Shown here: piece after piece, positions 3,997 through 35,893 of the stretch
Layout of the letters: every line of letters starts with the position of its first letter
Numbering within the stretch: the first letter of the stretch is position 1
Virus record (IMG/VR): IMGVR_UViG_3300017971_000001
Location: 124,001 to 188,000 of that record
DNA length: 64,000 bases
Direction: 5' to 3' (one strand)
Position numbers and translations under genes: made by a program
The notes under the pieces: generated by a model
Databases searched by the model: none
Told to the model about the DNA's origin: nothing
What the model saw: only the letters and a program-made list of their open reading frames with translations

Positions 3997-4068
3997 AGCG
4001 GGCGGCGGGGATCGAACCCGCGACGAACGGGTTGGAAACCCGACGCTCTACCGCTGAGCTACGCCCGC
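3997..4068 (-). tRNA. tRNA-Gly (TCC)
   Basis: GCGGGCG/CGCCCGC acceptor, GCTC/GAGC D arm, loop TT-TCC-AA, TTCGATC T loop, U discriminator; CCA not encoded. Confidence 0.93.
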
Positions 4069-4148
4069 GTTTTCAGCTGCGACACCCCACCCTCCGTGCC
4101 GCCTCACCCCGTGTCGACGAGGTCCCTGTATCTACCACTCCTGGTCAA

Positions 4149-4604: not shown

Positions 4605-5834
4605 TCACAACCCTAGATTTGCCAGGATCATGTTCAGCGCCGACTCGTTTTCGGCGGTCCCGACGAACACGTCCGGCTCGTCCGGGTTGAATGTCGTTCC
4701 CAAGTGGACCGAGTACGGCTCGGCGCCCTGGACCCACTCCTCGGAATCAGCCTGGTTCAACGCCATGCACCGGACGATCACAGCTACCTCCTCGTCCGGC
4801 CAGAGCGGGTTCCCCGCTTCGTCGAGCTCGAAGTTGATCCCGCTCGGATCCCACTCGATCCTCAGGTTCGGAGGCCTCCCGACGGGAAGCACAGCCGTCG
4901 CCCAAGGATCAAGGTTGCTGCTTTCGTCTTCGAACCCGAACTCTCGCAGGAGGTGGGGGAACGGAACCAAGGGCTGGTAGTCGAACCCATGAAGCGGGAG
5001 CACGCTGTGGTCGCGGCCGGGATCGGCCGTTCTCATGCTCGAGTCGACGTAGTCGACCGCTCGACGCTGATCGCGCTCGATAGGGATCCAGGCCCGATAG
5101 AACAGCGGCTGCATGATCTCCTGATAGGCGTAATCCGGATCCTCGTCGACCGCGAACCCCTCCTCGGTTGCGAGGTAGTCAACGAACCAGTTCACCGGAA
5201 ACAGAGCGCGTGGGTAGTGCCCCAGGTCCATGTGCCAGGCCATGACGCCCAGTAGGCGAGGTCCAGGCTCGACGAGCGCTCGGGCCGCGGCGAGCAGGTA
5301 TTCGACCTGATCTTCACCCCGGATCATGCGATTGACCGCGGGTGGCATGCGAAACTCGCCCTCACCGTATAGGTAAACCTTTCCACCGCGGCCGCCGAAG
5401 TTCCACGGCCTCCTTTCCGCAGGAAGATCGAGCCAGGAAGCGTCGAGGGTAGCGAAGCAGGCGACCTGGTCCTCCCCTTCGACGTCCGACCAATCCACCG
5501 GTCGATCGCTCAGCAAATCAGGCCAGCCGATCAGCAGCAGCGCGTCACCAGGCAACAACCTGCCGAGAATGAAGTTCGGGGCCTTGGGGTAGGGAACCAG
5601 GAACCAGTCCGAACCGAGCTCCTGAGCGGCGAGCACGAAAGGTTCGAAGGCCTCGTCGACCTGGCCCGCGCGCAGGAGCGCGGTGGCGTAGGCGAGCACG
5701 TCTTCGCTCGAGCCGGTCTCCTCGGCGCGGCGCTCAAGGTCTCGGAGGCGTCCTGCTGGGTTTCGCTTCACCGAATCGTGTCCGCTGCGCTCACGCCAGC
5801 GCCGGCCCTCGTCGCTGTTGCGTCGGTATCTCAT
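4605..5834 (-). CDS. NP/DER-module protein
   Basis: ATG 5834 overlaps the upstream TGA; KRNPAGRLRDLERRAEETGSSEDVLAYATALLRAG near the N-terminus. Confidence 0.7.
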   Translation of the reverse strand: MRYRRNSDEGRRWRERSGHDSVKRNPAGRLRDLERRAEETGSSEDVLAYATALLRAGQVDEAFEPFVLAAQELGSDWFLVPYPKAPNFILGRLLPGDALLLIGWPDLLSDRPVDWSDVEGEDQVACFATLDASWLDLPAERRPWNFGGRGGKVYLYGEGEFRMPPAVNRMIRGEDQVEYLLAAARALVEPGPRLLGVMAWHMDLGHYPRALFPVNWFVDYLATEEGFAVDEDPDYAYQEIMQPLFYRAWIPIERDQRRAVDYVDSSMRTADPGRDHSVLPLHGFDYQPLVPFPHLLREFGFEDESSNLDPWATAVLPVGRPPNLRIEWDPSGINFELDEAGNPLWPDEEVAVIVRCMALNQADSEEWVQGAEPYSVHLGTTFNPDEPDVFVGTAENESALNMILANLGL

Positions 5835-6325
5835 TCGAACTCCACGTCCCCCTGGAGTCGCCAGGTAGCACCGCAGTCCGAACACGAAAGGAGGTTTGTC
5901 CAACCTCCCGTAATGTCGTGGTCCTCGTAACCGATCGTCGCGCGGTCCTCGTAGATCGTAGGAGAGGAAACGATTCCGTAGTTGTTCTCGAGCGTAAAGT
6001 ATGTATCTCCGCTGGAGTGGTAGTAATCGGGGTCGTCTTCGTCTCGCCAAAACTGAAACGCGGCGTGACCCCTCGGGCAGACGAGGTTGTTCTCCCAGTC
6101 AGGGAACCAGTTTCCGTTGCGGCGCTCCCACCGAATGAGGTGCTCTTCGTCGCTGACGTAATTGGGCAGCGCGTCCATGACCGCCCGGTAAAGCGCGACC
6201 TGGTCTTCGAGCGAGAGCGCTTCGATCATGCCCTGCCGAAGCCGCAGCGCGATCAACGACGTCCGGGCGTCCAGGTCACCCTGGCCGGCGCGGCGCTCGA
6301 GCTCGCGGGCGCGCGGGTCAGTCAC
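5831..6325 (-). CDS. DER-module protein with C-terminal Cys motifs
   Basis: MTDPRARELERRAGQGDLDARTSLIALRLRQG; CPRGH and CSDC. Confidence 0.7.
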   Translation of the reverse strand: MTDPRARELERRAGQGDLDARTSLIALRLRQGMIEALSLEDQVALYRAVMDALPNYVSDEEHLIRWERRNGNWFPDWENNLVCPRGHAAFQFWRDEDDPDYYHSSGDTYFTLENNYGIVSSPTIYEDRATIGYEDHDITGGWTNLLSCSDCGATWRLQGDVEFE

Positions 6326-6711
6326 TCAGACCCTTCGATCCATACACCAGATCGAAGATCCTCCGGCATGAGCTCGCCGCGATCGACCAATTCCTTGGCA
6401 GCTTCAAAGACGTAGCTCGGAGAGGCGTGCCCGCCAGTCAACCGCTTCTCCAAAAGAATCTCGTAGTGGAAGTCATAGAGCTCGTCGTCTGCGTGTTCAA
6501 CCGAAGTGATAAACCCAGCGTCTTCTAGATTATTCAACTCCTCTCTCCACCTCTCGATTGAACCCTCGAACGTGCGAAGGTCGCCGTCATGGTCGTAAAA
6601 CTCAACCCGGACCACAGCTTCGACCCCCAGGCTCGCAAGGAACTCGCGCTGCAGGCCGGGTGTGTTGCGCAGGATAGCTGACGCGCGAGCGAGGATTTCG
6701 TCCGGGCTCAC
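6322..6711 (-). CDS. Hypothetical protein
   Basis: GTGA-coupled on both sides. Confidence 0.6.
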   Translation of the reverse strand: MSPDEILARASAILRNTPGLQREFLASLGVEAVVRVEFYDHDGDLRTFEGSIERWREELNNLEDAGFITSVEHADDELYDFHYEILLEKRLTGGHASPSYVFEAAKELVDRGELMPEDLRSGVWIEGSE

Positions 6712-7046
6712 TCGAGGAACTCCTCGATCTTGTAGCCCACGTAGGTCGAGACCATGTCGGTCAGCACGTTCGCCGCAGACTCAGGGCTCCCCCAGAGCAG
6801 GTCCGGCCGCGTTACCCGCACGCCGAACTCAACCGCCTCGTTGAGCGTGGTCAAGACCAAAACCTCATGCTCCGTGACGCCCATGCGCCGGCCGATCATG
6901 CCCCAGATCACATGCGTCGCCGTCCAGCCGTCCACGGCCTTACCGGGACGCTCTTCCTTCCAGCGCCTCCAGGGGCCGTCGATTGCGTGCAACGCCGCCA
7001 CGTAAGCTGCGTAGAGGGCGCAGTAAGCAATAAGGTTCTTGGACAC
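6708..7046 (-). CDS. Small membrane protein
   Basis: Hydrophobic N-terminus; DGWTATH and E...E-S..N...D pattern. Confidence 0.55.
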   Translation of the reverse strand: MSKNLIAYCALYAAYVAALHAIDGPWRRWKEERPGKAVDGWTATHVIWGMIGRRMGVTEHEVLVLTTLNEAVEFGVRVTRPDLLWGSPESAANVLTDMVSTYVGYKIEEFLE

Positions 7047-7050
7047 AGGA

Positions 7051-7383
7051 CTAGGCGATCTTCTTGATCTTGCGGTAGATGTACGTGCCCGTCAGCCCGA
7101 GCGCCATGCCCGCCACGCCGATCGCAAGGATCCGCGAAAGAGGGCCAGGCTCGCCGTAGGGCGCGACCGTCACCGTGCCCGCGATCGTGTTCACGTCGAA
7201 GGTCGGCTTGAGCGCAGCCAGGAAGAACTCACCGATTCCGGGAGTGCGACTGCTCTGGCCGGTCAGATCGGCTCCGGTGTAGGTGACCGAAGGACTCAAC
7301 GTTGAGCGGAAGGTGACGGAACGGATCGGGTTCGCCGCGGCACCGCTGATCGCGCTCGAGACAACGCGGGTAAGGTCAGACAT
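7051..7383 (-). CDS. C-terminally membrane-anchored protein
   Basis: AGGAG RBS; ILAIGVAGMALGLTGTYIY followed by basic tail. Confidence 0.6.
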   Translation of the reverse strand: MSDLTRVVSSAISGAAANPIRSVTFRSTLSPSVTYTGADLTGQSSRTPGIGEFFLAALKPTFDVNTIAGTVTVAPYGEPGPLSRILAIGVAGMALGLTGTYIYRKIKKIA

Positions 7384-7442
7384 AGCTTGACTCCTCTTTC
7401 CTTCAGTTTAGCGGAGTTACAGGGGCCTGCCGTACAGCAGAC

Positions 7443-7465
7443 GACCCCCGGACGAACCGGGGGTC
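7443..7465. terminator. GC-rich hairpin after 7488-7967, possible terminator
   Basis: GACCCCCGG-ACGAA-CCGGGGGTC; no clear U tract. Confidence 0.4.
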
Positions 7466-7487
7466 TACTGTCGATCCGGGGGCTGCG

Positions 7488-7967
7488 TTACGACGTCGGG
7501 GGGCGGAACTTCTTCTTCTCGCCCTTGGGCTTGGTCCCGCGGACCTGCTCCTTGAAGTTCTCGGCCTGAATGGCGGAGACCTCCTCCTCGAACAGCTGGG
7601 CCTGCGCGGCCTGAAGTTGCTGCTGAGCGGCGAAGAGGTTCTCGGACGCGTCGAGCAAGGCGTCCATGCGCTCCACGATTCCGTCGAAGGCCTCGATCTC
7701 GGGGACGTTGAGGTTTTCGCCCCAGCCGAAGCTACGGACCTCCTTCGAGTCCACCACGACCTTGTTCAGCACGAAGGCCGCGCCGGTCTCCTTGGCCTGG
7801 CAGAACTTCGTGAAGACCTCGTCATGAGTCGGGCCGTCGTCGGGGTGCTCGATCGTCTGAAAGCGACCGTCCTTGAACATGATCGCCCAGAAGTTGTCGT
7901 CCCCGTCGGAGTCGGAGTCGTCTTCGTCAATGTCCGGCAGAGCCGGGTCCAGCACTTCGGTCGTCAT
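7488..7967 (-). CDS. Acidic hypothetical protein with coiled coil
   Basis: GAGGAG RBS; plausible composition. Confidence 0.6.
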   Translation of the reverse strand: MTTEVLDPALPDIDEDDSDSDGDDNFWAIMFKDGRFQTIEHPDDGPTHDEVFTKFCQAKETGAAFVLNKVVVDSKEVRSFGWGENLNVPEIEAFDGIVERMDALLDASENLFAAQQQLQAAQAQLFEEEVSAIQAENFKEQVRGTKPKGEKKKFRPPTS

Positions 7968-7977
7968 TCTCTTCTCC

Positions 7978-9003: not shown

Positions 9004-9057
9004 AGTGGAACTCCTCGCACTAACAAGTAGTGAAGCACGAGAAGCAAGTCTGTCCAG

Positions 9058-11136
9058 CTATCGGGACTTGCGCTTTTTCAGCGCGCCTCCTGCCAGCGCC
9101 GCGGCTCCCGCCGCCCCGGCCGCGGTTGCGACCGCCGTCGTGACGCAGACTGGGCAGGGGTTGCTGCGAACCCGCCGCTGAGCAAACGCGTGATCGCTCA
9201 AGGTCAGTTGATCGCTGGCAATCTCGCCGTCGGCCCACAGCGTGCTCAGCCACTCCCAGGCGAGATCGGCTTCGATCACTCGCTCGTAGTTGGGTTCGAG
9301 TCCGTTCTCGCCCCCGATCGCCGTTACGGTCGCCAGGTGATTGGCCGTTTGGATCGGCTCGCCCTCGTAGAGGCTCACGACGTAGTAGAAATCTTCGTAG
9401 TTCTCCATGTGCGACAGCGACCAGTCGTATTCAACCCCGAAGACCCAGCCCCTTTCTTCCGCCTCGCGCTCCGCCCAGGCCAGGTCGACCGCGTTGCGCA
9501 CACGGTGCTCGATCTGCTCAATCGCGTCCGCGCCAGCAGGGTGCGACCAGCCTGCCCACTCATACATGTATCGCTCGGCTTCGTTGAGGTTGAAGCGAGC
9601 GAGGACCGTCTCCTCAAGCTTGCCGTGAAGTTCAAGCAGGCGAATGTATTCCTCCTGCTCCTCGGGCGTGCGCTGCTTGCGCTCGAGCTCTCGGATCCGC
9701 TGGTCGCCGCGGGGTGGATTGAAGCCGATCCTCCTCCTGAGAATGGCCTGGCGAATCGACTCGATTCCGATCTTGTCCCAAGGCGACCCGCACCTGCCCT
9801 GCATGACGAACGCATGAAGTTCGTGAGGGGCGTAGTACCTCAGCAGCATGTCGGCTCGGAGCAATCGAGGCTCCTGGGCCTGTGAAGTCGGGGCGTCCCG
9901 CTCAAGGACGATCTGGCCGTCGCGGGTCAGAGCGCAATCAACAAGATCCTCGCTCATGACCTCAACGACTTCGAACTTTATTCCGTGAGCGTCCCCCAGG
10001 GCCTCAGCACATGCCAGCATTTTCGCGTTCTGGATCCGAGCTTCGATTCGAGCCATTTCACCGCGGCGGCGTTCGTCAAAAGCGGACCACCCGTAGCCAG
10101 ATCGCTCGTAGAAGTAACGCTCGGCAGGAGTGAGCGTCTGCGGGATCACGTGCTCCTCCAAGCGCCCGAGCTCGCCATGAAGTTCAAGCAGGCGAATGTA
10201 CTCTTCCTGCTCTTCCGGCGAGCGCTCGATCCGCTCGAGCTCGCGAATCCGCTCGTCCCCGCGAGGCGGGTTGAGCATGACGACGTCGTGCCCCTCGGCC
10301 GCCAACTCCCGCAGGAGTCGCTTCAGACTCGTGAGCGCGTTCTTCCAGGATCGCGGGTCACTGGCCGTCTTGGGAAAACCGATCGTCTTGCCCTTGATCT
10401 TGTAGATCAAGTGCTTCTTGCTGCGAACTAGCTTGGCGTCGTTCTGCTCGAGCAGCCACTTGACCTGGGAGAGCGCGTCACTGGAGCGCCCCTTCTTCTT
10501 GCCCTTCTTCCTCTTCTTCTTGGGATTCCTGCGCACGATCACGCTCCATTGCCGTTCGTTCAATCGCCCCAGGAACTGGTCCAGCGCGAGCTCGAGATCG
10601 TCGGTCGGGGCCGTGCTCCCGTAGCTCATGAGGCCCGGCGTCGCGTCCCGGACCGCCCAGCGCAGCGCAGACGGATCGCCCTGCTCGAGCCAGGCACGCA
10701 GCAACTCCTTGCGCCAGGGCTCGGCGCGCCGCTCGGCGAGCGTCCCCCAGAACGGGGTCAGCGAAATCGTATCAACGCGAAGGAAGTCCCCCGCCGCGGC
10801 CCGCGCCTGAGGCGTCGAGCGGGACAGGCGCCTTATGCGGGCCTCTACGTGATCCAGGAGCTCGTCGTCCAGAACGCGTTCGCCGGACGTAAAGGGCGAG
10901 GCGATCGGGTTGCTCATGACGCCCTCAAACAGAGGTCCTGGGCCCTCGTCTTCACGCGGGTCGTAGATCGGCGGAGGTTCAATTCCGACGCGATCTCGCT
11001 TCTGCTTGGCGTCGAGCCAACTCTGGTAGCTCTTCTCGAGCTCTTCGCGCCGGGCTCGCCGATCTTTGATCGCGCGAATGCGGGCGCGCTCTCGCTCGCT
11101 CGAGATCCACCAGGCCCAGTCTTCCCATTCGCTCAT
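9058..11136 (-). CDS. NP-delimited multi-module protein with HicA-like domain and two DER modules
   Basis: Start MSEWED; five NP motifs; duplicated NPPRGD(E/Q)RIRELER..PEEQEEYIRLLELHG; HicA-like segment ~10290-10490. Confidence 0.7.
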   Translation of the reverse strand: MSEWEDWAWWISSERERARIRAIKDRRARREELEKSYQSWLDAKQKRDRVGIEPPPIYDPREDEGPGPLFEGVMSNPIASPFTSGERVLDDELLDHVEARIRRLSRSTPQARAAAGDFLRVDTISLTPFWGTLAERRAEPWRKELLRAWLEQGDPSALRWAVRDATPGLMSYGSTAPTDDLELALDQFLGRLNERQWSVIVRRNPKKKRKKGKKKGRSSDALSQVKWLLEQNDAKLVRSKKHLIYKIKGKTIGFPKTASDPRSWKNALTSLKRLLRELAAEGHDVVMLNPPRGDERIRELERIERSPEEQEEYIRLLELHGELGRLEEHVIPQTLTPAERYFYERSGYGWSAFDERRRGEMARIEARIQNAKMLACAEALGDAHGIKFEVVEVMSEDLVDCALTRDGQIVLERDAPTSQAQEPRLLRADMLLRYYAPHELHAFVMQGRCGSPWDKIGIESIRQAILRRRIGFNPPRGDQRIRELERKQRTPEEQEEYIRLLELHGKLEETVLARFNLNEAERYMYEWAGWSHPAGADAIEQIEHRVRNAVDLAWAEREAEERGWVFGVEYDWSLSHMENYEDFYYVVSLYEGEPIQTANHLATVTAIGGENGLEPNYERVIEADLAWEWLSTLWADGEIASDQLTLSDHAFAQRRVRSNPCPVCVTTAVATAAGAAGAAALAGGALKKRKSR

Positions 11137-11143
11137 GCTGCCC

Positions 11144-13975
11144 TCAGAACAAGTAGGCCTGGCGGGGATCGTCGAGCAGCCGGCCGCAGCGAACGATAAT
11201 GTTCGCCCCGAGTTTGCTGAGGTAGATCTCACCCCCCTCGTAGAGAGTGCGCAACGCCTCGGCCGCCTCAGCGCCCAGCCTACCCAGCACGAAGTGCTCG
11301 TGACCGAAAGCGTGAACCATGCGGCACCAGGTCCGCAGCAACGCTCGCAGTTCGTTCAGGTCCGAAAAGATCACGTCGTAGAGCACGAGCGACTTACCGA
11401 GCCGGGCGACCAGGCCCCCTCCGCGCTCGCTCGCGCCGCGCCCCCCAAAGCGACCGGCGACGATCGCGCCCGAGAACGGGTCCATGGGCAGGTAGCCGAT
11501 CTCGACAACCGACTCTTGCCCCCAGCCCGACCGCATGCTGATCTCGAGCCCGCTCTCTGCGTCGCGCCAGCTGTACTCCTTCGGATTCTCGACCGGCCGG
11601 AGCACATACTTCCGCCCTTCCTTGCCGAGCTCGGCACGCAAGGCGTCGAAGGAGCGATCGAAGACACGATCAGAGAACAGGACTGGAGGTGCCCCGGCGC
11701 TCAAGGACGCGTCGATCTGCTCCGGGGTCAGATCCGTCGATCGGTCGTTCGCCCGTCCCAAGGCGTCGACAAGGACCTCGCGCGACAAGGCGACGTTGCC
11801 CTCCAAGAGCTCGCGACGGACACCGGGAGCCATGCGGCGGAACGCCGTGACGAGCTCGGCGCGCAGGGCGTTGCTTCGGTCCTGCTTGGTCTCGCGCCGC
11901 TTCTTGGCACGCTTCTTGGTCTTGGCGCGCTTCTCCTCCAGGCGCTCGACGGCTCCGCCGCCCTCGTAGCGCTGCCGAGCGGCAGCGAGGAGTTCCTCGC
12001 CCCGCTTCTTCATGGACCCGCCGCTCGCCTTGTGCCAGTTGCCGGGCTTGCCCTTGAGCAACTCGTAGCTGCGCTTCTTGAACTTGATCCGCCGGTTGCC
12101 GTCGGGGTGGCGCAACCCGCCCCACTGATCGCGCGTCCAGCCTCGGCCCAGGTAGTAGGCAGAGATCAGATCGGCGCCCAGGTCCGTCGTGACCTTCTTC
12201 TTGCGGCCGGCAACCTTGAGCACTTCAGCGTCGCCGGGCTCGAGTCCGAGCGCTAGTCGAGCAACCTCGTCCTTGTTCGCAGCCTGAGTGAGCACGCGAC
12301 CCTTGTCGGCCTCACCGATCCGCAACCGCTCGCGCAGCAAGTTCGCCTCAGCCTCAGGCGTCGGCGATTCCTGGAACTCCCGTTCGGCGCGGGCAAAGCG
12401 ATCGTCGGGGTTCATTTGCCGGGGCGGCCCGGAACGCTGGTAAGGGCGAGGTGGCCAGTTGTCCGCAAACTCTTCGATCGAAGCCATGGCGTAATCGACG
12501 CTGGCCTTCGCTTCTTCGATATGGCCGTTTTCGATTTGGTGGACCGCGGAAACGACCGCGGACAGAGGCCCGCGCAGTTCTTCTTGGTGACCGCTTTGGA
12601 CGTAGAGGTCGTCCGTTCGACTCAAGAGCCTGCGGAGATCGGCGCCTGCGTACTGCGCGTACCGATCCGGATCGGTGTGCAGTCCCTCCCAAACGTCCAG
12701 GAGTCGATCAGAGAGGTTCTTAGCGATCCAGGCCTGGTAATCACTTCGGGCAGGATTTCCGCGCGCAGGCCAAACCGGGCGCCCGTCGCGCGGCGGCGGC
12801 TCGTGCAGGTAGGCCCACATGATCAATCCGAGGTGCTGGCGCGTCGGGATCCAAGCGCCTCGCTTCGCGCTCCACTCCCAAAACGGACGGCCGCTCTCTT
12901 CCATTTGGGTGACGTGCCGGGCAATGAACTCGCCGCGGCGATCCCACCAGGACGTCTTCGCTGTCGCCTTGCGCTTCTTGAGCGCTGACTTCTTTCCTTT
13001 GACCGCCTTGTAGGCCTGAAGGAATCCTTCGCCTGTGACCTTGCTGCTTCCCTTGCGAGCCACCTCGCTGACACCACGCTCCTCAGCCAACGGCTCCCAC
13101 TTCCTGACCTCGGCCAGGGAGAGGTAGGGACGAGCGGCGCCCCACCTCTTCGTACGGCTTGGGTTTGCCTTGACGAGCTTCCGAGCCGCTCCAGCCGCGT
13201 CCCTGGCAGCGCCAACGGCTCCCTCGCCTGCTTTGGTGATCGCGCCCTCGGCGAGGTCGGTCACAGGCTGGGTAATCCACTTGTCGATCCGGTTGGTCAC
13301 GAGCTCGGCAGCAGCACCCGAAGCCGTCCAGCCGATCAATTTGCCCACGAGCTCGGTCCCCGAAAGGCCGAACGGATTGTCTCGATAACGGCGCTGGAGC
13401 GTGCGCTCGTGCTCCGCCTCGTCGAAGTATGCGTCGATCGCGTCCTGGATCTCGCCCAGCGAGACCTCCGAGGGCTCCATGTCGGCACGCAGGTAGCCCA
13501 CGCGCTGCAACTCACGGGCGAGCTCGGTCAGCAGGCGCGCATATCGCTCTCCGCTCGAGGCGTGCAGCTGCCGGTAGAGCAAGCGCATGCGCTCGTCCCG
13601 GCTCGGGTTCCTCTTCGCCTTGGAGGGCTTGTCCTTGGGGGTCATTTCGTTTGCCTCGCGAACGAGCTCGGCGATCTCAGGGGGGTAGGGGACGCGTTGA
13701 CCCTTTTTGGCCTTGACCTTCTTCTTGACCTGCTTGAGCAAGATCGAGCGACCCTGCTTGGTCTTGTTGAGCTCTCTGATTGCGTGAATCGGCAGGCAGA
13801 GCGGCGGGCGATCGCCTGAGAGACGGGTGCCCTTCGCGCCGCACTTGTGCGACCAGTCCAGGTCCTTGTTGTATTGTCCCTTCTTCAGCGGCGTGCTGTC
13901 GCGATTCTTGCGCAGCAAGATCGAGCGCCAGTCTTGCTGGGTCCACTGCCACGACTGGTATCCAGGCGCTCCCAC
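11144..13975 (-). CDS. 943-aa NP-delimited multi-module protein
   Basis: KRNPSRDERMR, RDNPFG, KANPSR, RGNPAR and QMNPDDRF at composition boundaries. Confidence 0.7.
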   Translation of the reverse strand: MGAPGYQSWQWTQQDWRSILLRKNRDSTPLKKGQYNKDLDWSHKCGAKGTRLSGDRPPLCLPIHAIRELNKTKQGRSILLKQVKKKVKAKKGQRVPYPPEIAELVREANEMTPKDKPSKAKRNPSRDERMRLLYRQLHASSGERYARLLTELARELQRVGYLRADMEPSEVSLGEIQDAIDAYFDEAEHERTLQRRYRDNPFGLSGTELVGKLIGWTASGAAAELVTNRIDKWITQPVTDLAEGAITKAGEGAVGAARDAAGAARKLVKANPSRTKRWGAARPYLSLAEVRKWEPLAEERGVSEVARKGSSKVTGEGFLQAYKAVKGKKSALKKRKATAKTSWWDRRGEFIARHVTQMEESGRPFWEWSAKRGAWIPTRQHLGLIMWAYLHEPPPRDGRPVWPARGNPARSDYQAWIAKNLSDRLLDVWEGLHTDPDRYAQYAGADLRRLLSRTDDLYVQSGHQEELRGPLSAVVSAVHQIENGHIEEAKASVDYAMASIEEFADNWPPRPYQRSGPPRQMNPDDRFARAEREFQESPTPEAEANLLRERLRIGEADKGRVLTQAANKDEVARLALGLEPGDAEVLKVAGRKKKVTTDLGADLISAYYLGRGWTRDQWGGLRHPDGNRRIKFKKRSYELLKGKPGNWHKASGGSMKKRGEELLAAARQRYEGGGAVERLEEKRAKTKKRAKKRRETKQDRSNALRAELVTAFRRMAPGVRRELLEGNVALSREVLVDALGRANDRSTDLTPEQIDASLSAGAPPVLFSDRVFDRSFDALRAELGKEGRKYVLRPVENPKEYSWRDAESGLEISMRSGWGQESVVEIGYLPMDPFSGAIVAGRFGGRGASERGGGLVARLGKSLVLYDVIFSDLNELRALLRTWCRMVHAFGHEHFVLGRLGAEAAEALRTLYEGGEIYLSKLGANIIVRCGRLLDDPRQAYLF

Positions 13976-14397
13976 TAGGACGGCTCCTTCGCAAGCACGA
14001 CCGCGCGCTCTCCGAATCCGTCGTAGACCTTGAGGAGGACAACCTCGGCGGCCCCCTCGAACGTCTCCTCGGTGTCACGATAGAAGAAGTGCGGACCGTG
14101 GGTCATGCAGTTGTAGCGAAGCTCGCGCCAGGGGCCCGGCGGGACCTCCTTGACCTCGCCGTCGATCTCTCCGTCCAGGTAAGCGTGAACGTTGCGCTGA
14201 CCCTTCTCGCGAGCCCGCTCCCAGCCCGAGCAAACGACATGAGGCTTGCAGCCCCTCAAGCGCAGCCCGCGGGCGTACCCTTCGACCTTTCCGTCACGCG
14301 TAACCGCAAAGCAGAGGTTGTGCAGGTTGTAGTGGACGCGCGCCTTGCCCGAAAAGTTGGTCAGCGGGCGGTCGATCGGATCGCAGCAGCGGATCAT
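13975..14397 (-). CDS. Phage-type hypothetical protein
   Basis: RVHYNLH, RNVHAY and LRYN motifs; coupled to neighbours. Confidence 0.6.
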   Translation of the reverse strand: MIRCCDPIDRPLTNFSGKARVHYNLHNLCFAVTRDGKVEGYARGLRLRGCKPHVVCSGWERAREKGQRNVHAYLDGEIDGEVKEVPPGPWRELRYNCMTHGPHFFYRDTEETFEGAAEVVLLKVYDGFGERAVVLAKEPS

Positions 14398-16637
14398 GAT
14401 CCCTCCACGGGGTCCGGAAGGCCGTCGAACGGATCCTCCTCCAGGCCGAAGAATCGCTGCATGAACGAACGGTGCTCGAGGGGAACGTGGTTCACGTTAT
14501 AGGGGTCATACTCTTCGACTCGAACCTGAAAGCTCCCAAGGCGGTATACCCAGCCAGGAACGAAGTCAGGGTCGACGCCGTATCCTCCAGAGTTCAGAGG
14601 CCACAGCCGGATTCCCCCCGCCCCGCCCCCTGGGAAGCGAAAGTCGACGTGCGGAATCAAAAAGACCGGAGGGCCCTCGTCTTCACCAGTGAAAGCGAAC
14701 TCGAAATAGACGCGGTCGACGACGACAACAGACCGGTCATTGTCAAGCCACTCTTCGGTCGTGTATCCATGACCGCTCGGAAAATTCCCCGCACGAAAAG
14801 CTCGGCGCGCCTGAACAGGCGACCAACGAAGCGTGATCTTCTCTCCGGGACTGGGCAGAAATCCGAGCTCCTGAAGGATCGCGAGGTCCTCCGCGAGCTC
14901 CCTGCTCGTCGGGATATCAAGTTCCCCCAAAGGACTGGCTCCCTCTGGAACGAAATGGTAGAGCGGGGGGCGTGGCTCGACCCCGCGACGGATACGCTCG
15001 ATCCGAGCGGCGATCGGATCGCGACCGCGCTCGAGCCGCCGCATGCGCTCGTCGGGGTTGTTGCGGACGCGCCCCGGCCAGTCAATTTCAATTTCTTCGC
15101 CAATACGTGGCGCCTTCCAGGCGCCGCCGGCCAGCCTAGCGTCTATGTAAAACCTCGAGCCGCTTACCTCAAAATAGATCGTAGGCCGAAGCCAGTCTCC
15201 AGGGACAACCTCGCAAGGGTCTGGAAATTCATACCTCAGGTCAGCGCACTTCGTGACCACTTCTCCGTTCAAACCGCGGGACCAACGAGGCCTAAACGAC
15301 GGATAGCCCAACGAGGGATCCCAGCTAATCCTGATCTCTGAATCGAACTGAGGAAGCAGGCCGAGCTCCTGCTGAATCGAAATGATCTCTTGGATCTCTT
15401 CCCGAGAGGGGATTCCGCCTCGGCCGAAAGCGTCTATGCCTGGGTAGCAGCGGCGGAGATCAACGTAACTCTCTTCCGCCGGGACGTTGTCGAACTTGAA
15501 CTCGAGCGGAGGCACCGGCTCGACCCCGCGGCGAATTCGCTCGATTCGGGCAGCGATCGGATCGTCGCTGCGCCCGAGTCGGCGCATGCGCTCGTCGGGG
15601 TTGCTGCGGACGCGTCGCTTGAGGTAAGACCGGTAGCTCTTGGTGGTCGGGCGGACGTGCCCGGTCGGGCAAGACCCGTCTTCGAGACAGGCTCCCAGGC
15701 CGACGTCGGTGATCTTGGTCGGCACGGGATCAAAGCGTGCCAGCGCGTCGTTCACCAGGCGGAGGTGGTGGCCCGGCAGCGCCAGGTAGACCTCCTGATA
15801 CTTGGGCGCGACCAGGCAGAACCAGTCCCCAATTCGATCGACGAGCTCAGCACGAGCCGCGCCGCGGAGGTGCTTGGGCGGGAAGTCGTAACCCGTCTGG
15901 GGGTATTCGCGCGACCATGCGTAGGGAACGATTCCGAGCGGCTCGCTGACCACGAACAGGTCGAGCTTCTTGCCCTTGAGCCCCTTGAGGTAGCCGTGCT
16001 TGTGGCTCGGCGCCTCAGGGAAGGGTTTGGTCCCAGCACAGGGGACGAGGACAGCCTTCTTGTGCTTCGGCTTGAAGCGGTGCGCCTTCTTACGGTTCTT
16101 GACGATCAGCGGGTGCTTGATCGCGCGCAGGCCCTGACGCGGCGAGCGGACGCGGAAGTAAGGCGGGTTCTTCCGGAACGACTGACGCGACTTGTAGACC
16201 ACGATCGGGATCATGTATCCGAACGCGCGCTCGAGGTCCACGTAGAGGTCGCCCTGTCGACTCCGGCGCCCCAGGTGTCGCAAACGGAGCTCCCCGGATT
16301 CACCTCCGAAGTCGAACAGGACGTCGATTACCTTGTAGCGCTCGCCGCGGCGATCGACCACGAACACGTCAGCCGTCCCGGCTCCGGCCGCGGCCAGAAG
16401 ATCCTCCCAGGTGTTGGGGTTGGTGATCCCCATGACCGGTCCGACGGTCAGCATGCTCTGCAGCGCCTGGGTGATCGCCGGCTTCTCGTAGGTCCCCTCA
16501 GGCTGATAGATCAGCGGCGCCTCGCCCGAAGCGAGGTCGGCAAAGACGAGGCCGCGAGGCGGAGTCGTCATGGTCTTGGGTGCCGGCATGGGCAGGAACG
16601 CCTCGGCGGACGCCGGCAGGAGCGGCTCTTCGCTCAC
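14394..16637 (-). CDS. NP-delimited multi-module protein with DUF5591/ArcS-TGT-associated-like domain and two DER modules
   Basis: LVPCAGTKPF..APSH, VVSEPLGIVP, YP..GYDFP; duplicated NPDERMRRL...DPIAARIERIRRGVEP. Confidence 0.7.
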   Translation of the reverse strand: MSEEPLLPASAEAFLPMPAPKTMTTPPRGLVFADLASGEAPLIYQPEGTYEKPAITQALQSMLTVGPVMGITNPNTWEDLLAAAGAGTADVFVVDRRGERYKVIDVLFDFGGESGELRLRHLGRRSRQGDLYVDLERAFGYMIPIVVYKSRQSFRKNPPYFRVRSPRQGLRAIKHPLIVKNRKKAHRFKPKHKKAVLVPCAGTKPFPEAPSHKHGYLKGLKGKKLDLFVVSEPLGIVPYAWSREYPQTGYDFPPKHLRGAARAELVDRIGDWFCLVAPKYQEVYLALPGHHLRLVNDALARFDPVPTKITDVGLGACLEDGSCPTGHVRPTTKSYRSYLKRRVRSNPDERMRRLGRSDDPIAARIERIRRGVEPVPPLEFKFDNVPAEESYVDLRRCYPGIDAFGRGGIPSREEIQEIISIQQELGLLPQFDSEIRISWDPSLGYPSFRPRWSRGLNGEVVTKCADLRYEFPDPCEVVPGDWLRPTIYFEVSGSRFYIDARLAGGAWKAPRIGEEIEIDWPGRVRNNPDERMRRLERGRDPIAARIERIRRGVEPRPPLYHFVPEGASPLGELDIPTSRELAEDLAILQELGFLPSPGEKITLRWSPVQARRAFRAGNFPSGHGYTTEEWLDNDRSVVVVDRVYFEFAFTGEDEGPPVFLIPHVDFRFPGGGAGGIRLWPLNSGGYGVDPDFVPGWVYRLGSFQVRVEEYDPYNVNHVPLEHRSFMQRFFGLEEDPFDGLPDPVEGS

Positions 16638-18046
16638 CCTTCACCTCGCAGGTAGCGCGTCAGGAGACCGTCGTCTCCGTAGAGGAGGTCCATACAGAAA
16701 GAGTCAAAGGCCTCCGAGTCCAATTCAAGGCGAACCAGAAAGTCGGCTTCATACGCGTCGCCGGCCGGGTGAACCTCCAAGAAGCCAACGACGCCATGCG
16801 CGCGATCGGCCAAGAGGTCCCAGTAGCCCTCGCGGCTCAGGTGCCCTTCGAGGAACTCGAGCCATATGTCCCACGGCCCAAGCGGCTCCTCGAGCGGAAG
16901 ATCCCACTCAGAACGGAAGGCCGCGGCCGCGGCCGCAATGTCCCCCTGCTTGACCTCCACGAAAGGACTCAAAACGTCCAACAAGAGATTACGAAGCGAA
17001 GCAAGAGGGCTCAGCATTCCGGAGATCTCTTCGTAGTAAAGAGACTCCCCTTCGCTCCGAGACTCCCTTGAATAGACGGCAAGATAGGGCGCGACGCCGT
17101 AGCCGCTCACGCTTGGCCCGAGGGACGGCCAGTCTACGAAGAGACGAGCGTCCTCTCGCTGCGCTTCGTCCCGCGCGTTCTCGACCAACCACTCGGACAG
17201 CGCGCCGACGACCCCCAATCTCGCCGCCTGCAGCCGGCGCTCCAGGCGCTCAGCAGGAATCTCGCGGCCAGCTTGCGACTCGCGCGAAATGTCGTAGCAG
17301 AACAAAGCGACGAACGCCCAGAGCGGCGGGCCAGACAAGTTGTCGACATAGGTCTGCTCGGCCAGCGTGCCGTCGAAGAGCAGTCGGAACGCGTCGTCGT
17401 CCAAGTCCTCGAGCAAAACGAATTCCGCTCGCTGACGGGGCGTCGCGTGGCACCCGCGGTCGACCAGGACCTTTGGGGCCGCCAACAGCCCGAGCAGGTA
17501 GGCGTCCGCCGGGTGGATCACGCCCCGACGTGTTGCCTCACGCGTGTACCGCTCCCAGGCCTCTTGGGTGTTGTCTTCTTGAGCGCGCCTCAGAACTTCG
17601 CGCAGGCGCTCGCGACGGGGGTTCAGCGCCACCTGGAGTCCCTTTGCACGCTTGGTGCTGGGCCAGCGCAGGTCGTAACCGATCTTGACGCCCGTGACTG
17701 CCGACCCCGCTCGATCCGCCCCCGGCTCGTCCGCCTCAGGGTCGGCGACGTGACCGATCTCGTGCGCGAACAGCGCCTTGCGGTTCTTCCTGGGCAGCCA
17801 GCGCGTCTGCTCGGCGAGTTCGAAGATCGGTGGCTCTTCTCCGACGCGAACCTGGGCGTAACGGCGCGCGTTCTCCTCATGCGTCTGCGTGAGCTCTCGC
17901 GGCCAACGGAGCACGAAGGGCCCCTTGAAGCCCGCCTTGCGGTAGAGGGCCTCATACTCCCTGCGGATCTGATCGCGCGATACAGGCCGCTTGAGCTTTG
18001 GGTGCTTATGTCTCCGGCAGAACTCTCGGCCGCTGGACCTGCTCAT
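16634..18046 (-). CDS. HExxH zincin-like domain, NP junction, DER-module domain
   Basis: LFAHEIGHV..E..AD; then ALNPRRERLREVLRRAQEDNTQEAWERYTREATRRG. Confidence 0.65.
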   Translation of the reverse strand: MSRSSGREFCRRHKHPKLKRPVSRDQIRREYEALYRKAGFKGPFVLRWPRELTQTHEENARRYAQVRVGEEPPIFELAEQTRWLPRKNRKALFAHEIGHVADPEADEPGADRAGSAVTGVKIGYDLRWPSTKRAKGLQVALNPRRERLREVLRRAQEDNTQEAWERYTREATRRGVIHPADAYLLGLLAAPKVLVDRGCHATPRQRAEFVLLEDLDDDAFRLLFDGTLAEQTYVDNLSGPPLWAFVALFCYDISRESQAGREIPAERLERRLQAARLGVVGALSEWLVENARDEAQREDARLFVDWPSLGPSVSGYGVAPYLAVYSRESRSEGESLYYEEISGMLSPLASLRNLLLDVLSPFVEVKQGDIAAAAAAFRSEWDLPLEEPLGPWDIWLEFLEGHLSREGYWDLLADRAHGVVGFLEVHPAGDAYEADFLVRLELDSEAFDSFCMDLLYGDDGLLTRYLRGEG

Positions 18047-18555
18047 TCTTCGATCCTAGCGGATTATCCGGCCCCTTCCGCCGCAGCACGAGCCTGCCCA
18101 TGGGGAAGCGGCGCATGTCGTCCTGCTCGAATAGAAAGACCTCGGGGCAGGAGAAGCTCAGCCATTCGACGTACTTGCTGTTGCAGCGCGGACAGGCTCC
18201 GTAGGGACAGCTGGGGTCCTTGGCGAGACAGAGCTCGCAGAACGGATCTCGGCAAGGGTGCTGGGGCGGCTGAACGCCTTCCTTGCGATTCGTCCGCTCG
18301 TGCCACTCGGACCCGCACTTCATGCACTCGTAGGACTCGCGCTTCCCTGGCTTCTTGCAGCGGCTCGAAGCGTCCGAGAAGTCCAGGCGCGCTACCTTCT
18401 TGCAGCGATCGCAGCCGTTGTACCAGCCAAGGTCAAGGCAGCGATCGCACGTCATGGGAAAAGGCCCCTCAAGAACGGGAAGGTGGCGGCGCAGAAGGCG
18501 GCCAGGAAGAGCGCGACGGTAACAAAATCCACCCAGTGATAGGGATCCTTTTCGC

Positions 18556-19194
18556 TCACCGGGTGTGCCGCCTCAGCGCCTGCTGGTAGCTCCGCTGAAT
18601 GCCGGCGCGCACGAGCGCCTTGGCCTGATCGTCACTTAGCTGCCTTGTTGCCTGCTGCAGCTGGCGATTCCCTGCCGTGGCCCGATAGAGCATGGCGCGG
18701 GCCGCACGGGGATTCTTGGCTCGCTCCCGCGCCTGCATAGCCCGATAGCGAATGTAACTCCGCTTCCAGTCGTTGACCTTCTTCTCGGCCTGAGCCGCAG
18801 CGACAGACCCAACAGCCCGAGCAGCCGACACGCCCATACGAAGACGCTGGAGGAGGCTGAGGTCGCGATTCGGCTGCGACGCTGGGGCCGAGCGAGCCCG
18901 CTGATACCGAGCCGGAATCCTCAGCGTCGGTGGCTGACGAGGCTGGGTTCGGAACTGGACTGGGGCCGAGCCCGCAGGCTTTGCGGCGCGAGCCGGCGCA
19001 AACTTGGACGTCGTTCCGACCCTGGAGGGAGCGGTTCGACCGGCAGTCGGGCGATACTGGATCGGGTCCGGCCGAATCGGCATGCGGACCTGGGTCGCCT
19101 GGCGTGCGTACCCTCCAGCTGGGAAGCCCTGGGGGAGCGCTGCCCCGGCGGGCGTAAAGATCGAGGGCGGATTGCCCAGCTGCAGCATGCTCAC
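18556..19194 (-). CDS. Basic Ala/Arg/Pro-rich protein
   Basis: Almost no acidic residues; LGNPP near the N-terminus. Confidence 0.55.
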   Translation of the reverse strand: MSMLQLGNPPSIFTPAGAALPQGFPAGGYARQATQVRMPIRPDPIQYRPTAGRTAPSRVGTTSKFAPARAAKPAGSAPVQFRTQPRQPPTLRIPARYQRARSAPASQPNRDLSLLQRLRMGVSAARAVGSVAAAQAEKKVNDWKRSYIRYRAMQARERAKNPRAARAMLYRATAGNRQLQQATRQLSDDQAKALVRAGIQRSYQQALRRHTR

Positions 19195-35887: not shown

Positions 35888-35893
35888 GCACTT

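What the first reader, a model, noticed from the sequence alone, without database searches (positions are those of the whole stretch)
4605..19194. Apparent polyproteins with cargo domains separated by basic-x-Asn-Pro motifs
Seen: in this block NP recurs where sequence character changes, usually after Arg/Lys: KRNP (twice), RRNP, RKNP, RDNP, KANP, RGNP, RVRSNP (twice, in different genes), RVRNNP, GFNPP, MLNPP, QMNP, ALNP, MSNP, LGNPP. The DER module that begins stand-alone genes elsewhere here starts right after NP, so NP sits where an initiator Met would be. Segments between NP motifs are unrelated (HicA-like, DUF5591-like, HExxH zincin, basic helical). Inference: polyproteins cut at or near NP, or NP as a packaging/sorting tag for virion-delivered effectors, loosely like T4 internal proteins processed by the prohead protease. 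Candidate proteases in the window are the C1 peptidase at 50444 and the HExxH domain at ~17750.
Basis: partly seen in the sequence, partly recalled or inferred. Interest (0 to 1): 0.85.

Follow-up and report, generated by a model that had tools for sequence, protein, structure and literature searches.

The report
Phage polyproteins joined by Asn-Pro
An uncultured giant phage strings many unrelated small proteins into long polyproteins whose joints are almost always the dipeptide Asn-Pro; this looks like a cleavage code, probably read by a small zinc protease that is itself one of the modules, and no such code was found described for DNA phages.

Summary
In the minus-strand operon 4605-19194, NP is the most over-represented of all 400 dipeptides (19 seen, 5.2 expected) and mostly follows a basic, acid-poor stretch. 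Relatives show that NP marks module boundaries. The same modules (ArcS-like DUF5591, L5-gp82-like, HExxH zincin, HicA-like, HTH, GNAT, DER hairpin, C-terminal hydrophobic tail) occur in many orders and combinations. They are NP-bounded when internal and start with Met or end at a stop when stand-alone.

All synonymous codons are used at NP, so selection acts on the protein. The Pro is specific to junctions: DER modules at true N-termini keep the Asn but never the Pro (0/5, against 30/35 internal).

A previously undescribed small gluzincin family (HExxH...ExxAD; model pLDDT 90) is tied to the motif. Of 78 members with a downstream extension, 64 have NP just after the domain. Of 22 internal or C-terminal members, 20 have NP just before it. 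Stand-alone members lack it.

Best reading (about 0.55): true polyproteins cut at or beside NP, most likely by this zincin. Cleavage itself is not shown. The C1 peptidase is a poor candidate. 2A-like skipping, NPTH-type autocleavage and a DNA-level motif fail their tests. No description was found in the searched literature.

The parts
4605..19194 (-). Tightly packed minus-strand operon that mixes NP-joined polyprotein genes with small stand-alone genes. Neighbouring genes are coupled by overlapping stop and start codons.
   Evidence: ORF map and GC3 periodicity. Start/stop overlaps were read from the coordinates: 16634-16637, 14394-14397, 13975 and 5831-5834.
16634..18046 (-). Polyprotein A (470 aa): zincin module, then NP, then DER hairpin plus an unknown 327-aa domain.
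17624..18046 (-). Small gluzincin-type metallopeptidase module (aa 1-141). It has HEIGH at aa 95-99 and E107-x-x-A110-D111, and ends ...KGLQVAL just before NP.
   Evidence: 98-sequence alignment: H95, E96, H99 and A110 invariant; E107 and D111 at least 90% conserved. AF2 pLDDT 90.1, pTM 0.85. Best PDB fold matches are the minigluzincins 4jiu, 4qhf and 4jix, then MATCAP and Wss1. No Pfam or PHROG family matched.
17618..17623 (-). NP junction between the zincin and the DER module (..LQVAL-NP-RRERLREV..).
   Evidence: The same junction occurs in 64 of 78 family members that have a downstream extension.
14394..16637 (-). Polyprotein B (747 aa): unknown module, NP, ArcS-like DUF5591, NP, DER plus domain, NP, DER plus domain (a paralogue of the previous one).
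16164..16169 (-). NP junction (..SFRK-NP-PYFRVRSP..) at the N-terminal edge of the ArcS-like module.
   Evidence: The junction is conserved at this edge of the module in the NP-bearing relatives (P0002-P0012 and P0025; P0010 and P0011 have a few extra residues; in P0021 the module begins the protein). In the model it lies in a low-pLDDT stretch just before the confident domain.
15603..16163 (-). ArcS-like (archaeosine synthase alpha / DUF5591) module, aa 159-345.
   Evidence: Pfam PF17884, E = 2.9e-10. NCBIfam ArcS, E = 2.2e-9. AF2 pLDDT above 95.
15597..15602 (-). NP junction (..KRRVRS-NP-DERMRRL..). In the model Asn is the N-cap and Pro the first residue of the DER helix.
15054..15059 (-). 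NP junction (..GRVRN-NP-DERMRRL..).
13975..14397 (-). Stand-alone L5-gp82-like gene (140 aa). In relatives the same module is internal and NP-bounded.
   Evidence: Pfam PF25735, E = 3.5e-14. Module family F4 in P0005, P0007, P0008, L005 and L009 begins right after NP, where this gene has its Met.
11144..13975 (-). Polyprotein C (943 aa) with six NPs, at nt 13604-13609, 13373-13378, 13160-13165, 12752-12757, 12407-12412 and 11582-11587. It contains two DER modules, the FGLSG helical module (F10) and module F20.
   Evidence: F10 and F20 recur NP-bounded in P0006, P0008 and P0012.
9058..11136 (-). Polyprotein D (likely start at Met33 of the ORF) with five NPs, at nt 10906-10911, 10522-10527, 10267-10272, 9715-9720 and 9157-9162. 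It contains a HicA-like module (10273-10521), two paralogous DER-plus-domain units, and a C-terminal hydrophobic tail (9061-9156).
   Evidence: The NP-CPVC..AGA tail recurs at the C-termini of P0004, P0007, P0008 and P0012.
4605..5834 (-). Protein E. It starts MRYRRNSD.. (ATGA overlap with the upstream stop), has an NP junction at 5757-5762 followed by a DER module, then a 317-aa segment that ends at the next NP (aa414).
   Evidence: the start was inferred from the coordinates.
5831..6325 (-). Stand-alone gene that begins directly with a DER module (MTDPRARELERR..).
18556..19194 (-). Basic protein rich in Pro, Ala and Arg, with a 7-residue leader before an NP (MSMLQLG-NP-PSIF..).
   Evidence: Short N-terminal leaders that end in NP are also seen in P0010, P0011, P0043 and L009.
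50444..51190 (+). It is judged an unlikely partner.
   Evidence: Pfam C1 E = 2.4e-4 and phrog_16701 E = 1.3e-15. Cys, His and Asn motifs are present. Its homologues are common bacterial C1 peptidases.

Best explanation
The operon encodes true polyproteins. Independent small phage proteins (enzyme-, regulator- and toxin-like modules, and helical adaptor modules) are translated as strings and then separated at a short linear signal: an invariant Asn-Pro, usually preceded by a basic, acid-free stretch.

The most likely agent is a phage-encoded endopeptidase. The best candidate is the 130-140-aa gluzincin module, which is usually the first module of a polyprotein and is itself bounded by NP. It would free itself in cis and cut the other junctions in trans.

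Shown: the motif, its enrichment, its coincidence with module boundaries, module shuffling, selection at the protein level, the junction-specificity of the Pro, and the family-wide link between zincin and NP.

Inferred: that the chain is cut at all, that the zincin does the cutting, and which bond is cut. N|P or X|NP seem more likely than NP|X. About a third of the residues after NP are R, K, L, F, Y or W, which would be destabilising N-termini under the bacterial N-end rule. That last point rests on general knowledge, not on a tool result.
For: 1. NP is the top over-represented dipeptide: z = 6.0 in the window's polyproteins and z = 27.6 (322 against 78 expected) in 80 fusion proteins of the zincin family.

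2. Homology breakpoints coincide with NP. 47% of internal HSP ends lie within 5 aa of an NP, against 6% at random. After de-duplication, 66 of 254 breakpoints lie within 8 aa, against 20.3 +/- 4.3 expected.

3. The same modules occur in many orders and combinations, and also as stand-alone genes whose Met or stop replaces NP. Examples are gp82-like 13975-14397 and the zincin at L007:20851-21234.

4. The Pfam domains found in four of eight relatives scanned (six hits) all lie between NPs, never across one.

5. All synonymous codons are used at the junction: AAC 71, AAT 12; CCG 32, CCC 26, CCA 16, CCT 9.

6. DER modules at true N-termini have NA, NM or a similar pair in 5 of 5 cases found by the profile; two more (MRYRRNSD, KTRKNAD) were read by eye. 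Internal DER modules have NP in 30 of 35. Stand-alone zincins end 2-29 aa (mostly 2-15) after GKGLQ, all but one without NP.

7. Tandem NPs 2-8 residues apart are common, as expected if each module carries its own site.

8. The zincin family has 284 cluster representatives. 64 of 78 with a downstream extension have NP within about 20 aa after the WPGKGLQ motif. 20 of 22 internal or C-terminal copies have NP just upstream. 64 copies are N-terminal in fusions.

9. The zincin has intact HExxH and ExxAD motifs and a confident minimal-gluzincin fold.

10. Structure model: NP157, NP346 and NP527 lie at domain edges.

11. Controls: DUF5591 homologues outside this lineage are fused without NP. Their loci show NP observed/expected of 1.1-1.7 and no zincin within 10 kb.
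Against: There is no direct evidence of cleavage.

NP is not avoided elsewhere. The rest of the window has observed/expected of 1.4, zincin interiors have 25 against 16 expected, and the SNF2 helicase keeps five NPs. A protease would therefore need more context than NP, or accessibility.

The zincin family also has stand-alone members in low-GC contigs where no NP polyprotein was seen.

In some relatives the zincin sits next to an HTH module, like ImmA/IrrE-type proteases that cut repressors. It could therefore have a different job.

The link between zincin and NP is confounded by shared ancestry and synteny. One NP-type locus (L010) shows no zincin in the 17 kb available.

A metalloprotease that needs Asn-Pro next to the scissile bond is unusual.

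N-terminal DER modules keep the basic stretch and the Asn (MRVRRNAD). Part of the motif may therefore belong to the module (a helix N-cap) rather than to a cleavage signal.
Confidence: 0.55

Rival explanations
1. The proteins are unprocessed multidomain 'polyvalent' proteins. In this reading NP is only a structural linker element (a turn, or a helix N-cap followed by Pro at the first helix position) that travels with the modules as they shuffle. The proteins act full-length, possibly tail-anchored by the C-terminal hydrophobic segment.
For: In the model, N346/P347 and N527/P528 are exactly the N-cap and first residue of the DER helices. N-terminal DER modules keep the Asn. NP is not depleted elsewhere in the proteome. 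Polyvalent phage proteins that stay uncut, such as the N4 virion RNA polymerase, are documented (PMC5512222). The hydrophobic tail is always the last module.
Against: Ordinary linkers do not keep one invariant dipeptide across more than 130 non-homologous junctions and across clusters below 50% identity. NP also precedes modules that do not start with a helix, such as NPPRFxVRSP, NPCPVC and NPGHDHP. The Pro is lost exactly when nothing lies upstream or downstream. Tandem NPxxxNP spacers make little sense as structure. Module order is essentially free, unlike functionally coupled fusions; outside this lineage DUF5591 is fused to QueC, NUDIX or ART without NP.
Confidence: 0.2
2. One reading: NP is a site or sorting tag for head-associated processing. 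The polyproteins would be packaged into the capsid, cut by the prohead protease and injected as effectors, as with T4 internal proteins or polyvalent proteins.
For: The module repertoire (GNAT, HTH, RelA/SpoT, HicA-like, zincin) resembles that of predicted injected polyvalent proteins (PMC5512222). Short N-terminal leaders that end in NP exist.
Against: The operon sits among replication, recombination and DNA-modification genes and is co-oriented with the SNF2 helicase. No structural genes, MuF-like domain or prohead protease were recognised among the window ORFs scanned. The ArcS-like module belongs to a DNA/RNA-modification enzyme family, and such an enzyme would be expected to act in the cell. 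No T4-type L/I-x-E or phiKZ-type S/A/G-x-E site pattern was seen.
Confidence: 0.1
3. No protease is involved. The chain is broken at Asn-Pro either on the ribosome (a bacterial counterpart of 2A 'StopGo', or an arrest-and-release site) or by Asn-cyclisation autocleavage of the kind seen at the NPTH motif of FlhB/SctU.
For: The Pro is needed only when a downstream module exists, and it would become the first residue of the next product, as in 2A. Basic residues upstream could slow the nascent chain. A phage tmRNA lies directly downstream of the operon. Autocleavage at the NPTH motif is known (PMC4620466; that the break lies between Asn and Pro is general knowledge).
Against: The 2A core NPGP is absent: Gly follows NP in only 46 of 480 sites, and no conserved upstream 2A-like peptide exists. 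The residues after NP and the surrounding folds vary, so there is no constant catalytic environment for autocleavage. There is no strong codon bias at the junction, apart from CCA at about twice its usual share. RA-NP, which would resemble the RAGP and RAPP arrest motifs (these motifs are recalled from memory), accounts for only 18 of 482 sites.
Confidence: 0.06
4. NP is the translated trace of a DNA-level signal, such as a recombination or cassette-insertion site (AAYCCN) used to shuffle modules.
For: Modules do shuffle at these points.
Against: Both Asn codons and all four Pro codons are used at frequencies close to genome-wide usage. The flanking nucleotides show no conservation beyond what the amino acids require. 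Five specified bases are also too few for a recombination target.
Confidence: 0.02

Closest known systems
Polyvalent proteins of phages and conjugative elements (Iyer, Burroughs, Anand, de Souza, Aravind 2017; PMC5512222)
   Same: Large phage proteins that combine 2-15 unrelated domains in highly variable architectures. A zincin-like metallopeptidase is the commonest hub domain and is proposed to release the other domains. GNAT domains are described there and HTH domains also occur here.
   Different: That paper's text has no occurrence of 'linker', and its cleavage passages describe no conserved junction motif. Here every joint carries Asn-Pro. The zincin matches no Pfam family above threshold. 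The modules also exist as ordinary stand-alone genes in the same operon. Delivery by the virion is not indicated by the gene context.
Polyproteins of RNA viruses with embedded proteases (picorna-, poty-, flavi-, alphaviruses)
   Same: One ORF encodes several independent mature proteins. A short conserved cleavage signal sits at each joint. The protease is itself part of the chain and is flanked by its own sites. The strategy analogy is drawn explicitly in PMC5512222.
   Different: This is a dsDNA jumbo-phage-like genome of about 245 kb in a bacterial host. The protease would be a minimal gluzincin, not a chymotrypsin-like or papain-like enzyme. The signal is Asn-Pro. Polyprotein genes alternate with normally separated genes.
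Pro-Pro endopeptidase PPEP-1 (Zmp1) of Clostridioides difficile, optimal site VNP|PVP (PMC8610288)
   Same: It is a zinc metallopeptidase whose site contains Asn-Pro, at P2-P1. NPP is the commonest junction variant in the non-redundant junction set (Pro 2.5-fold enriched after NP).
   Different: Only about 14-20% of junctions have Pro after NP. The fold search hit minigluzincins, not the PPEP/lethal-factor fold (4pkt only at E = 5). PPEP-1 is a secreted enzyme that cuts adhesins, not polyproteins.
Minigluzincins (proabylysin 4jiu, projannalysin 4jix, selecase 4qhf) and small phage M48/U49/M78/SprT-like zincins
   Same: They are metallopeptidase catalytic units of about 100-140 aa with HExxH plus a downstream Glu helix. 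They are the best structural matches.
   Different: The matches are weak (E = 5.5e-3, TM 0.43/0.60, 14% identity). The family here has its own conserved N-terminal HP.L.RP and C-terminal YD.RWPGKGLQ motifs. No sequence family matched.
Asn-Pro breaks made without a protease: NPTH autocleavage of FlhB/SctU (PMC4620466), reovirus mu1 N42-P43 (from memory), and 2A NPG|P ribosomal skipping
   Same: These examples show that a chain can break at or next to an Asn-Pro.
   Different: Each needs a fixed fold or a fixed longer motif (NPTH; D-x-E-x-NPGP). Neither is conserved at the junctions here.

Membership tests
Polyvalent proteins (Iyer et al. 2017) | Phage- or plasmid-encoded proteins with several unrelated domains in highly variable architectures | tested here: met
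   Module families F1-F31 recombine freely among the window's proteins and more than 30 relatives.
Polyvalent proteins (Iyer et al. 2017) | Embedded zincin-like metallopeptidase as a hub domain (MPTase-PolyVal type) | tested here: inconclusive
   A zincin is present and behaves as a hub. However, it matches no Pfam family above threshold; the only hits are sub-threshold to M48 and M78.
Polyvalent proteins (Iyer et al. 2017) | Packaged and transferred with the DNA into the host | not testable with these tools
   This needs virion proteomics. The gene context (replication and modification genes) does not suggest it.
Protease-processed viral polyprotein | The segments are independent proteins that also exist as separate genes | tested here: met
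   gp82-like, zincin and DER modules occur stand-alone, with Met or a stop exactly where NP lies in the fusions.
Protease-processed viral polyprotein | A conserved short signal at every junction | tested here: met
   NP with basic residues upstream. Homology breakpoints coincide with NP.
Protease-processed viral polyprotein | A protease domain lies within the chain and is flanked by its own sites | tested here: met
   NP lies downstream of the zincin in 64 of 78 cases and upstream in 20 of 22. The catalytic motifs are intact.
Protease-processed viral polyprotein | Demonstrated cleavage into mature products | not testable with these tools
   This needs expression, N-terminomics or metaproteomics.
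2A / StopGo ribosomal skipping | The motif D(V/I)ExNPG|P with a conserved upstream peptide | tested here: not met
   Gly follows NP in 46 of 480 sites. There is no upstream consensus beyond basic residues. A single incidental ENPGP occurs in P0004.
FlhB/SctU-type NPTH autocleavage | An NPTH loop inside a conserved fold | tested here: not met
   The residues after NP vary (R, P, G, S, A, D and others) and the flanking modules are unrelated.
Pro-Pro endopeptidases (PPEP, M34) | PPEP/lethal-factor-like fold and an obligatory Pro-Pro scissile bond | tested here: not met
   The fold search gives minigluzincins; lethal factor appears only at E = 5. NPP makes up only about 14-20% of junctions.
Minigluzincins / gluzincin clan | HExxH plus a downstream Glu ligand helix (ExxxD) in a minimal catalytic domain of about 100-140 aa | tested here: met
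   H95, E96 and H99 are invariant; E107 and D111 are at least 90% conserved; A110 is invariant. The top PDB hits are 4jiu, 4qhf and 4jix. This holds at fold and motif level only; family membership by sequence is not shown.
T4 internal-protein / prohead-protease processing | An N-terminal capsid-targeting sequence cut after L/I-x-E by the head protease, with genes in a head context | tested here: not met
   No such motif occurs at the junctions. No head genes were recognised near the operon.

The most novel reading that the evidence does not exclude
Asn-Pro, with its basic upstream stretch, could be a protease-independent chain-breaking signal that works on bacterial ribosomes. That would be a prokaryotic counterpart of 2A 'StopGo', possibly assisted by a phage factor. 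A DNA phage would then express many proteins from one ORF without stop codons, start codons or a protease.
Probability: 0.05. Interest if true: 0.97.

Novelty: new variant of a known kind. Interest (0 to 1): 0.85.

Why it matters
If the junctions are cut, this is a dsDNA phage lineage that expresses much of one large (about 15-kb) operon the way RNA viruses do. It would use polyproteins with a two-residue junction code and a protease of about 130 aa.

That would change how proteins of such metagenomic phages should be annotated. Splitting at basic-x-NP reveals the real functional units, many of which are now labelled only by one of their domains.

It would also supply a very small protease and site pair as a candidate tool for bacterial multi-protein expression.

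It gives a concrete, testable case for the long-standing proposal that polyvalent phage proteins are released by their embedded zincins.

Finally, it shows two interchangeable ways of separating adjacent products in one operon: stop/start overlap or NP. That makes gene fusion and fission directly observable.

Tried and rejected
- Megablast of the block, and tblastn of two polyproteins, against 50,697 phage records. Nothing related was found apart from a weak DUF5591 hit in Sulfolobus virus STSV2. The lineage has no sequenced isolate in that collection.
- IMG/VR scans returned only the source contig and one duplicate.
- The genome scan returned a single MAG contig, labelled Deltaproteobacteria. 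The host therefore remains uncertain. The 98-sequence alignment was too diverse for pattern generation.
- DNA-level motif: rejected on codon usage.
- Internal starts at the Val of RVR: rejected, because the codon is GTC in the window.
- 2A-like, NPTH-like, PPEP-like and RAGP/RAPP-like readings: their motifs are not conserved at the junctions.
- NP avoidance inside modules, as a signature of a protease: inconclusive. DUF5591 interiors have 0 against 3.2 expected, but zincin interiors have 25 against 16.
- C1 peptidase as partner: rejected as unlikely.
- Whole-polyprotein AF2 model: only the ArcS-like module and the DER hairpins are confident (mean pLDDT 58.6). The linker test therefore rests on three junctions.
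- DER module identity: no Pfam, NCBIfam or PHROG family matched. The DUF3375 hit is a short sub-threshold local match.
- Literature searches for NP-delimited or processed phage polyproteins found nothing relevant. The library is incomplete, so absence is not proof.

Full report
**Source and context**

The window is part of a 245-kb IMG/VR contig, IMGVR_UViG_3300017971_000001. It has about 63% GC.

The window carries phage-type replication, recombination and modification genes:
- an SNF2 helicase and a UvrD helicase, each interrupted by a LAGLIDADG intein;
- RusA, a PD-(D/E)XK nuclease and two DNA methyltransferases;
- a tmRNA and two tRNAs.

No recognisable head or tail gene turned up among the window ORFs scanned. 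No sequenced phage in the 50,697-record collection is related at DNA or protein level. The only related genome record found is a 190-kb contig binned in a 'Deltaproteobacteria' MAG. It is syntenic with the window: RusA, SNF2, then polyproteins.

**The observation**

The region 4605-19194 is one tightly packed minus-strand operon.

| Set | NP seen | NP expected |
|---|---|---|
| Block 4605-19194 | 23 | 7.1 |
| Rest of window | 27 | 18.9 |
| Five long proteins of the block | 19 | 5.2 (z = 6.0) |

- In the five long proteins NP is the most over-represented of all 400 dipeptides.
- Block NPs tend to follow a basic, acid-free stretch: 11 of 19, against a 28% background. NPs elsewhere in the window do not: 8 of 26.
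- Over 138 non-redundant junctions from the window and its relatives, the consensus is roughly [RK]-[RV]-[RK]-[ARKS]-N-P, with Pro enriched after it.

**NP marks module boundaries**

A search with the 747-aa protein found 26 relatives that share only its DUF5591 module.

In the 13 of these whose proteins carry NP junctions, that module ends ..AYRxFLxxRx-NP. Wherever something lies upstream it also begins, at or a few residues after a basic-x-NP, with PRFxVRSP (in P0021 the module starts the protein, and in P0008 the start is cut off). Around it sit quite different neighbours: HTH, GNAT, L5-gp82-like, SAP, ChaB and PAPS-reductase domains.

- All-against-all BLAST of 130-odd proteins puts 47% of internal alignment ends within 5 aa of an NP, against 6% at random.
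- After collapsing redundant ends, 66 of 254 breakpoints lie within 8 aa of an NP, against 20.3 +/- 4.3 expected.
- Cutting every protein at NP and clustering the pieces gives module families that recur in different orders and combinations.
- Several families also exist as ordinary genes. The window's stand-alone gp82-like gene (13975-14397) begins with Met exactly where the internal copies in P0005, P0007, P0008, L005 and L009 follow NP.
- The zincin is stand-alone in L007, where it ends ..GKGLQAAAW-stop. The fused copies read ..GKGLQVA[LR]-NP.
- The Pfam domains found in four of eight further relatives scanned (six hits) all lie between NPs.
- In the AF2 model of the 747-aa protein only the ArcS-like module and the DER hairpins are confident. 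The three junction NPs sit at their edges: NP157 in a low-confidence stretch just before the domain, and N346/P347 and N527/P528 at the N-cap and first residue of the DER helices.

**What kind of signal it is**

- Both Asn codons and all four Pro codons are used at junctions, at near-genomic frequencies, and the flanking nucleotides are not conserved. Selection therefore acts on the peptide, not the DNA.
- The Pro is junction-specific. DER modules at true N-termini read MRVRRNAD, MRLRRNAD, RRWRANAD, AKNMD or MTYRINA. These starts are fixed by GTGA/ATGA overlap with the upstream stop.
- By the DER profile, 0 of 5 N-terminal copies have NP, against 30 of 35 internal copies. A Fisher test computed by hand gives p of about 4e-4. 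Two more N-terminal copies read by eye (MRYRRNSD in the window, KTRKNAD in L005) also lack the Pro.
- Stand-alone zincins end shortly after GKGLQ, without NP in 65 of 66 cases.
- Tandem NPs 2-8 residues apart are frequent, as if each module brings its own site.
- Some proteins end exactly at NP or a few residues after one, and some start with a short leader that ends in NP.

An element that is invariant, short, independent of the flanking folds, and needed only when something is attached on both sides is best explained as a processing signal.

**The candidate protease**

The first 141 residues of the 470-aa protein form a zincin. It has HEIGH, then E107-x-x-A110-D111, and a conserved C-terminal YD.RWPGKGLQ.

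- A profile search of 1.84 billion representatives found 284 family members.
- Among the best 149: 62 are stand-alone, 64 are the first module of a longer protein, 10 are internal and 13 are C-terminal.
- 64 of 78 with a downstream extension have NP within about 20 residues after GKGLQ. 20 of 22 internal or C-terminal copies have NP immediately upstream.
- In the family members of at least 250 aa, NP occurs 327 times against 79 expected.
- The AF2 model is confident (pLDDT 90.1). Its best, though weak, structural matches are the minigluzincins proabylysin, selecase and projannalysin, followed by MATCAP, Wss1 and small phage SprT/IrrE/M48-like proteins.
- Language-model neighbours are small viral M48/U49/M78-like clusters.
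- No Pfam, PHROG or NCBIfam family covers it.
- Loci with close zincin relatives are again rich in NP polyproteins.
- Three control loci with DUF5591 homologues that lack NP junctions show NP at background level and no zincin within 10 kb.

It has intact papain-like motifs. Its homologues, however, are common bacterial C1 peptidases at 40-57% identity, and none was found on the related phage contig.

**Interpretation**

The best-supported reading is that these are real polyproteins cut at or beside Asn-Pro, most likely by the embedded gluzincin. It would act first in cis at its own C-terminus and then in trans.

Which bond is cut is open:
- NP can follow the zincin's structural end after a single residue (GKGLQ-S-NP).
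- NP directly precedes the first conserved residues of the next module.
- The cut must therefore be within or right next to x-N-P-x.
- About a third of the residues after NP are R, K, L, F, Y or W. These would be destabilising N-termini in bacteria, so a cut after NP seems less likely. This point rests on general knowledge of the N-end rule.

Caveats:
- Cleavage has not been observed.
- NP is tolerated elsewhere in the proteome.
- The zincin family extends to contigs without visible NP polyproteins.
- The zincin could instead be an ImmA/IrrE-like regulator protease, since it sometimes neighbours HTH modules.
- The statistical association is confounded by common descent.

**Comparison with known systems**

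- Polyvalent proteins of phages (PMC5512222) are the closest concept, and they include the idea of release by an embedded zincin. That paper's text never uses the word 'linker', and its cleavage passages describe no junction code. The zincin here belongs to no annotated family.
- RNA-virus polyproteins are the closest functional analogy.
- PPEP-1 shows that a zinc protease can read Asn-Pro, at VNP|PVP. Its fold and its Pro-Pro requirement do not match.
- 2A skipping and NPTH autocleavage fail their defining motifs.
- No paper describing NP-delimited phage polyproteins was found.

**Verdict**

The polyprotein interpretation is partly supported: the boundaries, the signal and a candidate protease are shown, but cleavage is not. 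I rate this a new variant of a known kind, of high interest.

Noticed in passing
window 4146-4557 (-) and 3997-4068 (-): A phage-encoded tmRNA (Rfam RF00023, 149 bits, full length) lies directly downstream of the polyprotein operon on the same strand, followed by tRNA-Gly(UCC). ARAGORN predicts the tag ADQKAHLPTATSRA, which does not end in the usual ..LAA (the usual ending is recalled from memory). Whether it relates to translation of the long ORFs is unknown.
   Followed up: partly
window 19401-22787 (-) and 43223-46627 (+): The SNF2-family helicase and the UvrD-family helicase are both interrupted by LAGLIDADG-type inserts; an intein splicing domain is detected only in SNF2. The SNF2 orthologues in L005 and L009 are about 380-480 aa shorter (747 and 646 aa), so they presumably lack the intein.
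   Followed up: partly
window 15603-16163 (-); also 24100-24900 (-) and 33470-34426 (-): The DUF5591 module matches archaeosine synthase ArcS (NCBIfam) and carries a PC...KP.....SH motif. A relative's locus has a faint QueC hit nearby (L009). Together with an N6/N4 and a C5 DNA methyltransferase, this suggests heavy DNA modification, possibly with 7-deazaguanine.
   Followed up: partly
window 62740-63813 (+): A stand-alone gene far from the block also starts with a DER module (MTYRINARGDRGRRELER..). It has Asn-Ala where internal copies have Asn-Pro.
   Followed up: partly
window 26732-27649 (-) aa48; 39666-41021 (+) aa116; 52226-52672 (+) aa13; 1752-2099 (-) aa82-85: Junction-like NPs occur in genes outside the block: SGRR-NP-RTDP, GRRGAV-NP, HRARI-NP and KE-NP-NP-P. 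The junction code may be used elsewhere in the genome.
   Followed up: no
window 34000-38600: A GC-rich island (0.68-0.72, against about 0.63 elsewhere). Long ORFs on both strands have similar codon-position GC, so the coding strand is ambiguous there.
   Followed up: no
window 10486-10521 (-) and relatives P0008, L009:11743-13248: Extremely Lys-rich stretches (for example KKKRKKGKKKGR) lie next to the NP junctions that flank the HicA-like module. KK is the second most enriched dipeptide in the window's polyproteins.
   Followed up: no
window 50444-51190 (+): A papain-like C1 peptidase with Cys, His and Asn motifs. Its nearest relatives are chromosomal bacterial genes (Planctomycetota, Pseudomonas, Methylobacterium). 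It is probably a host-derived gene of unknown role in the phage.
   Followed up: yes
window 61614-61688 (+): tRNA-Leu with anticodon AAG.
   Followed up: no
P0004 aa 880-890 (a relative, not in the window): One junction reads ..YVENPGPDERLRELA.., which by chance reproduces the eukaryotic-virus 2A core ExNPGP. No other junction does.
   Followed up: yes
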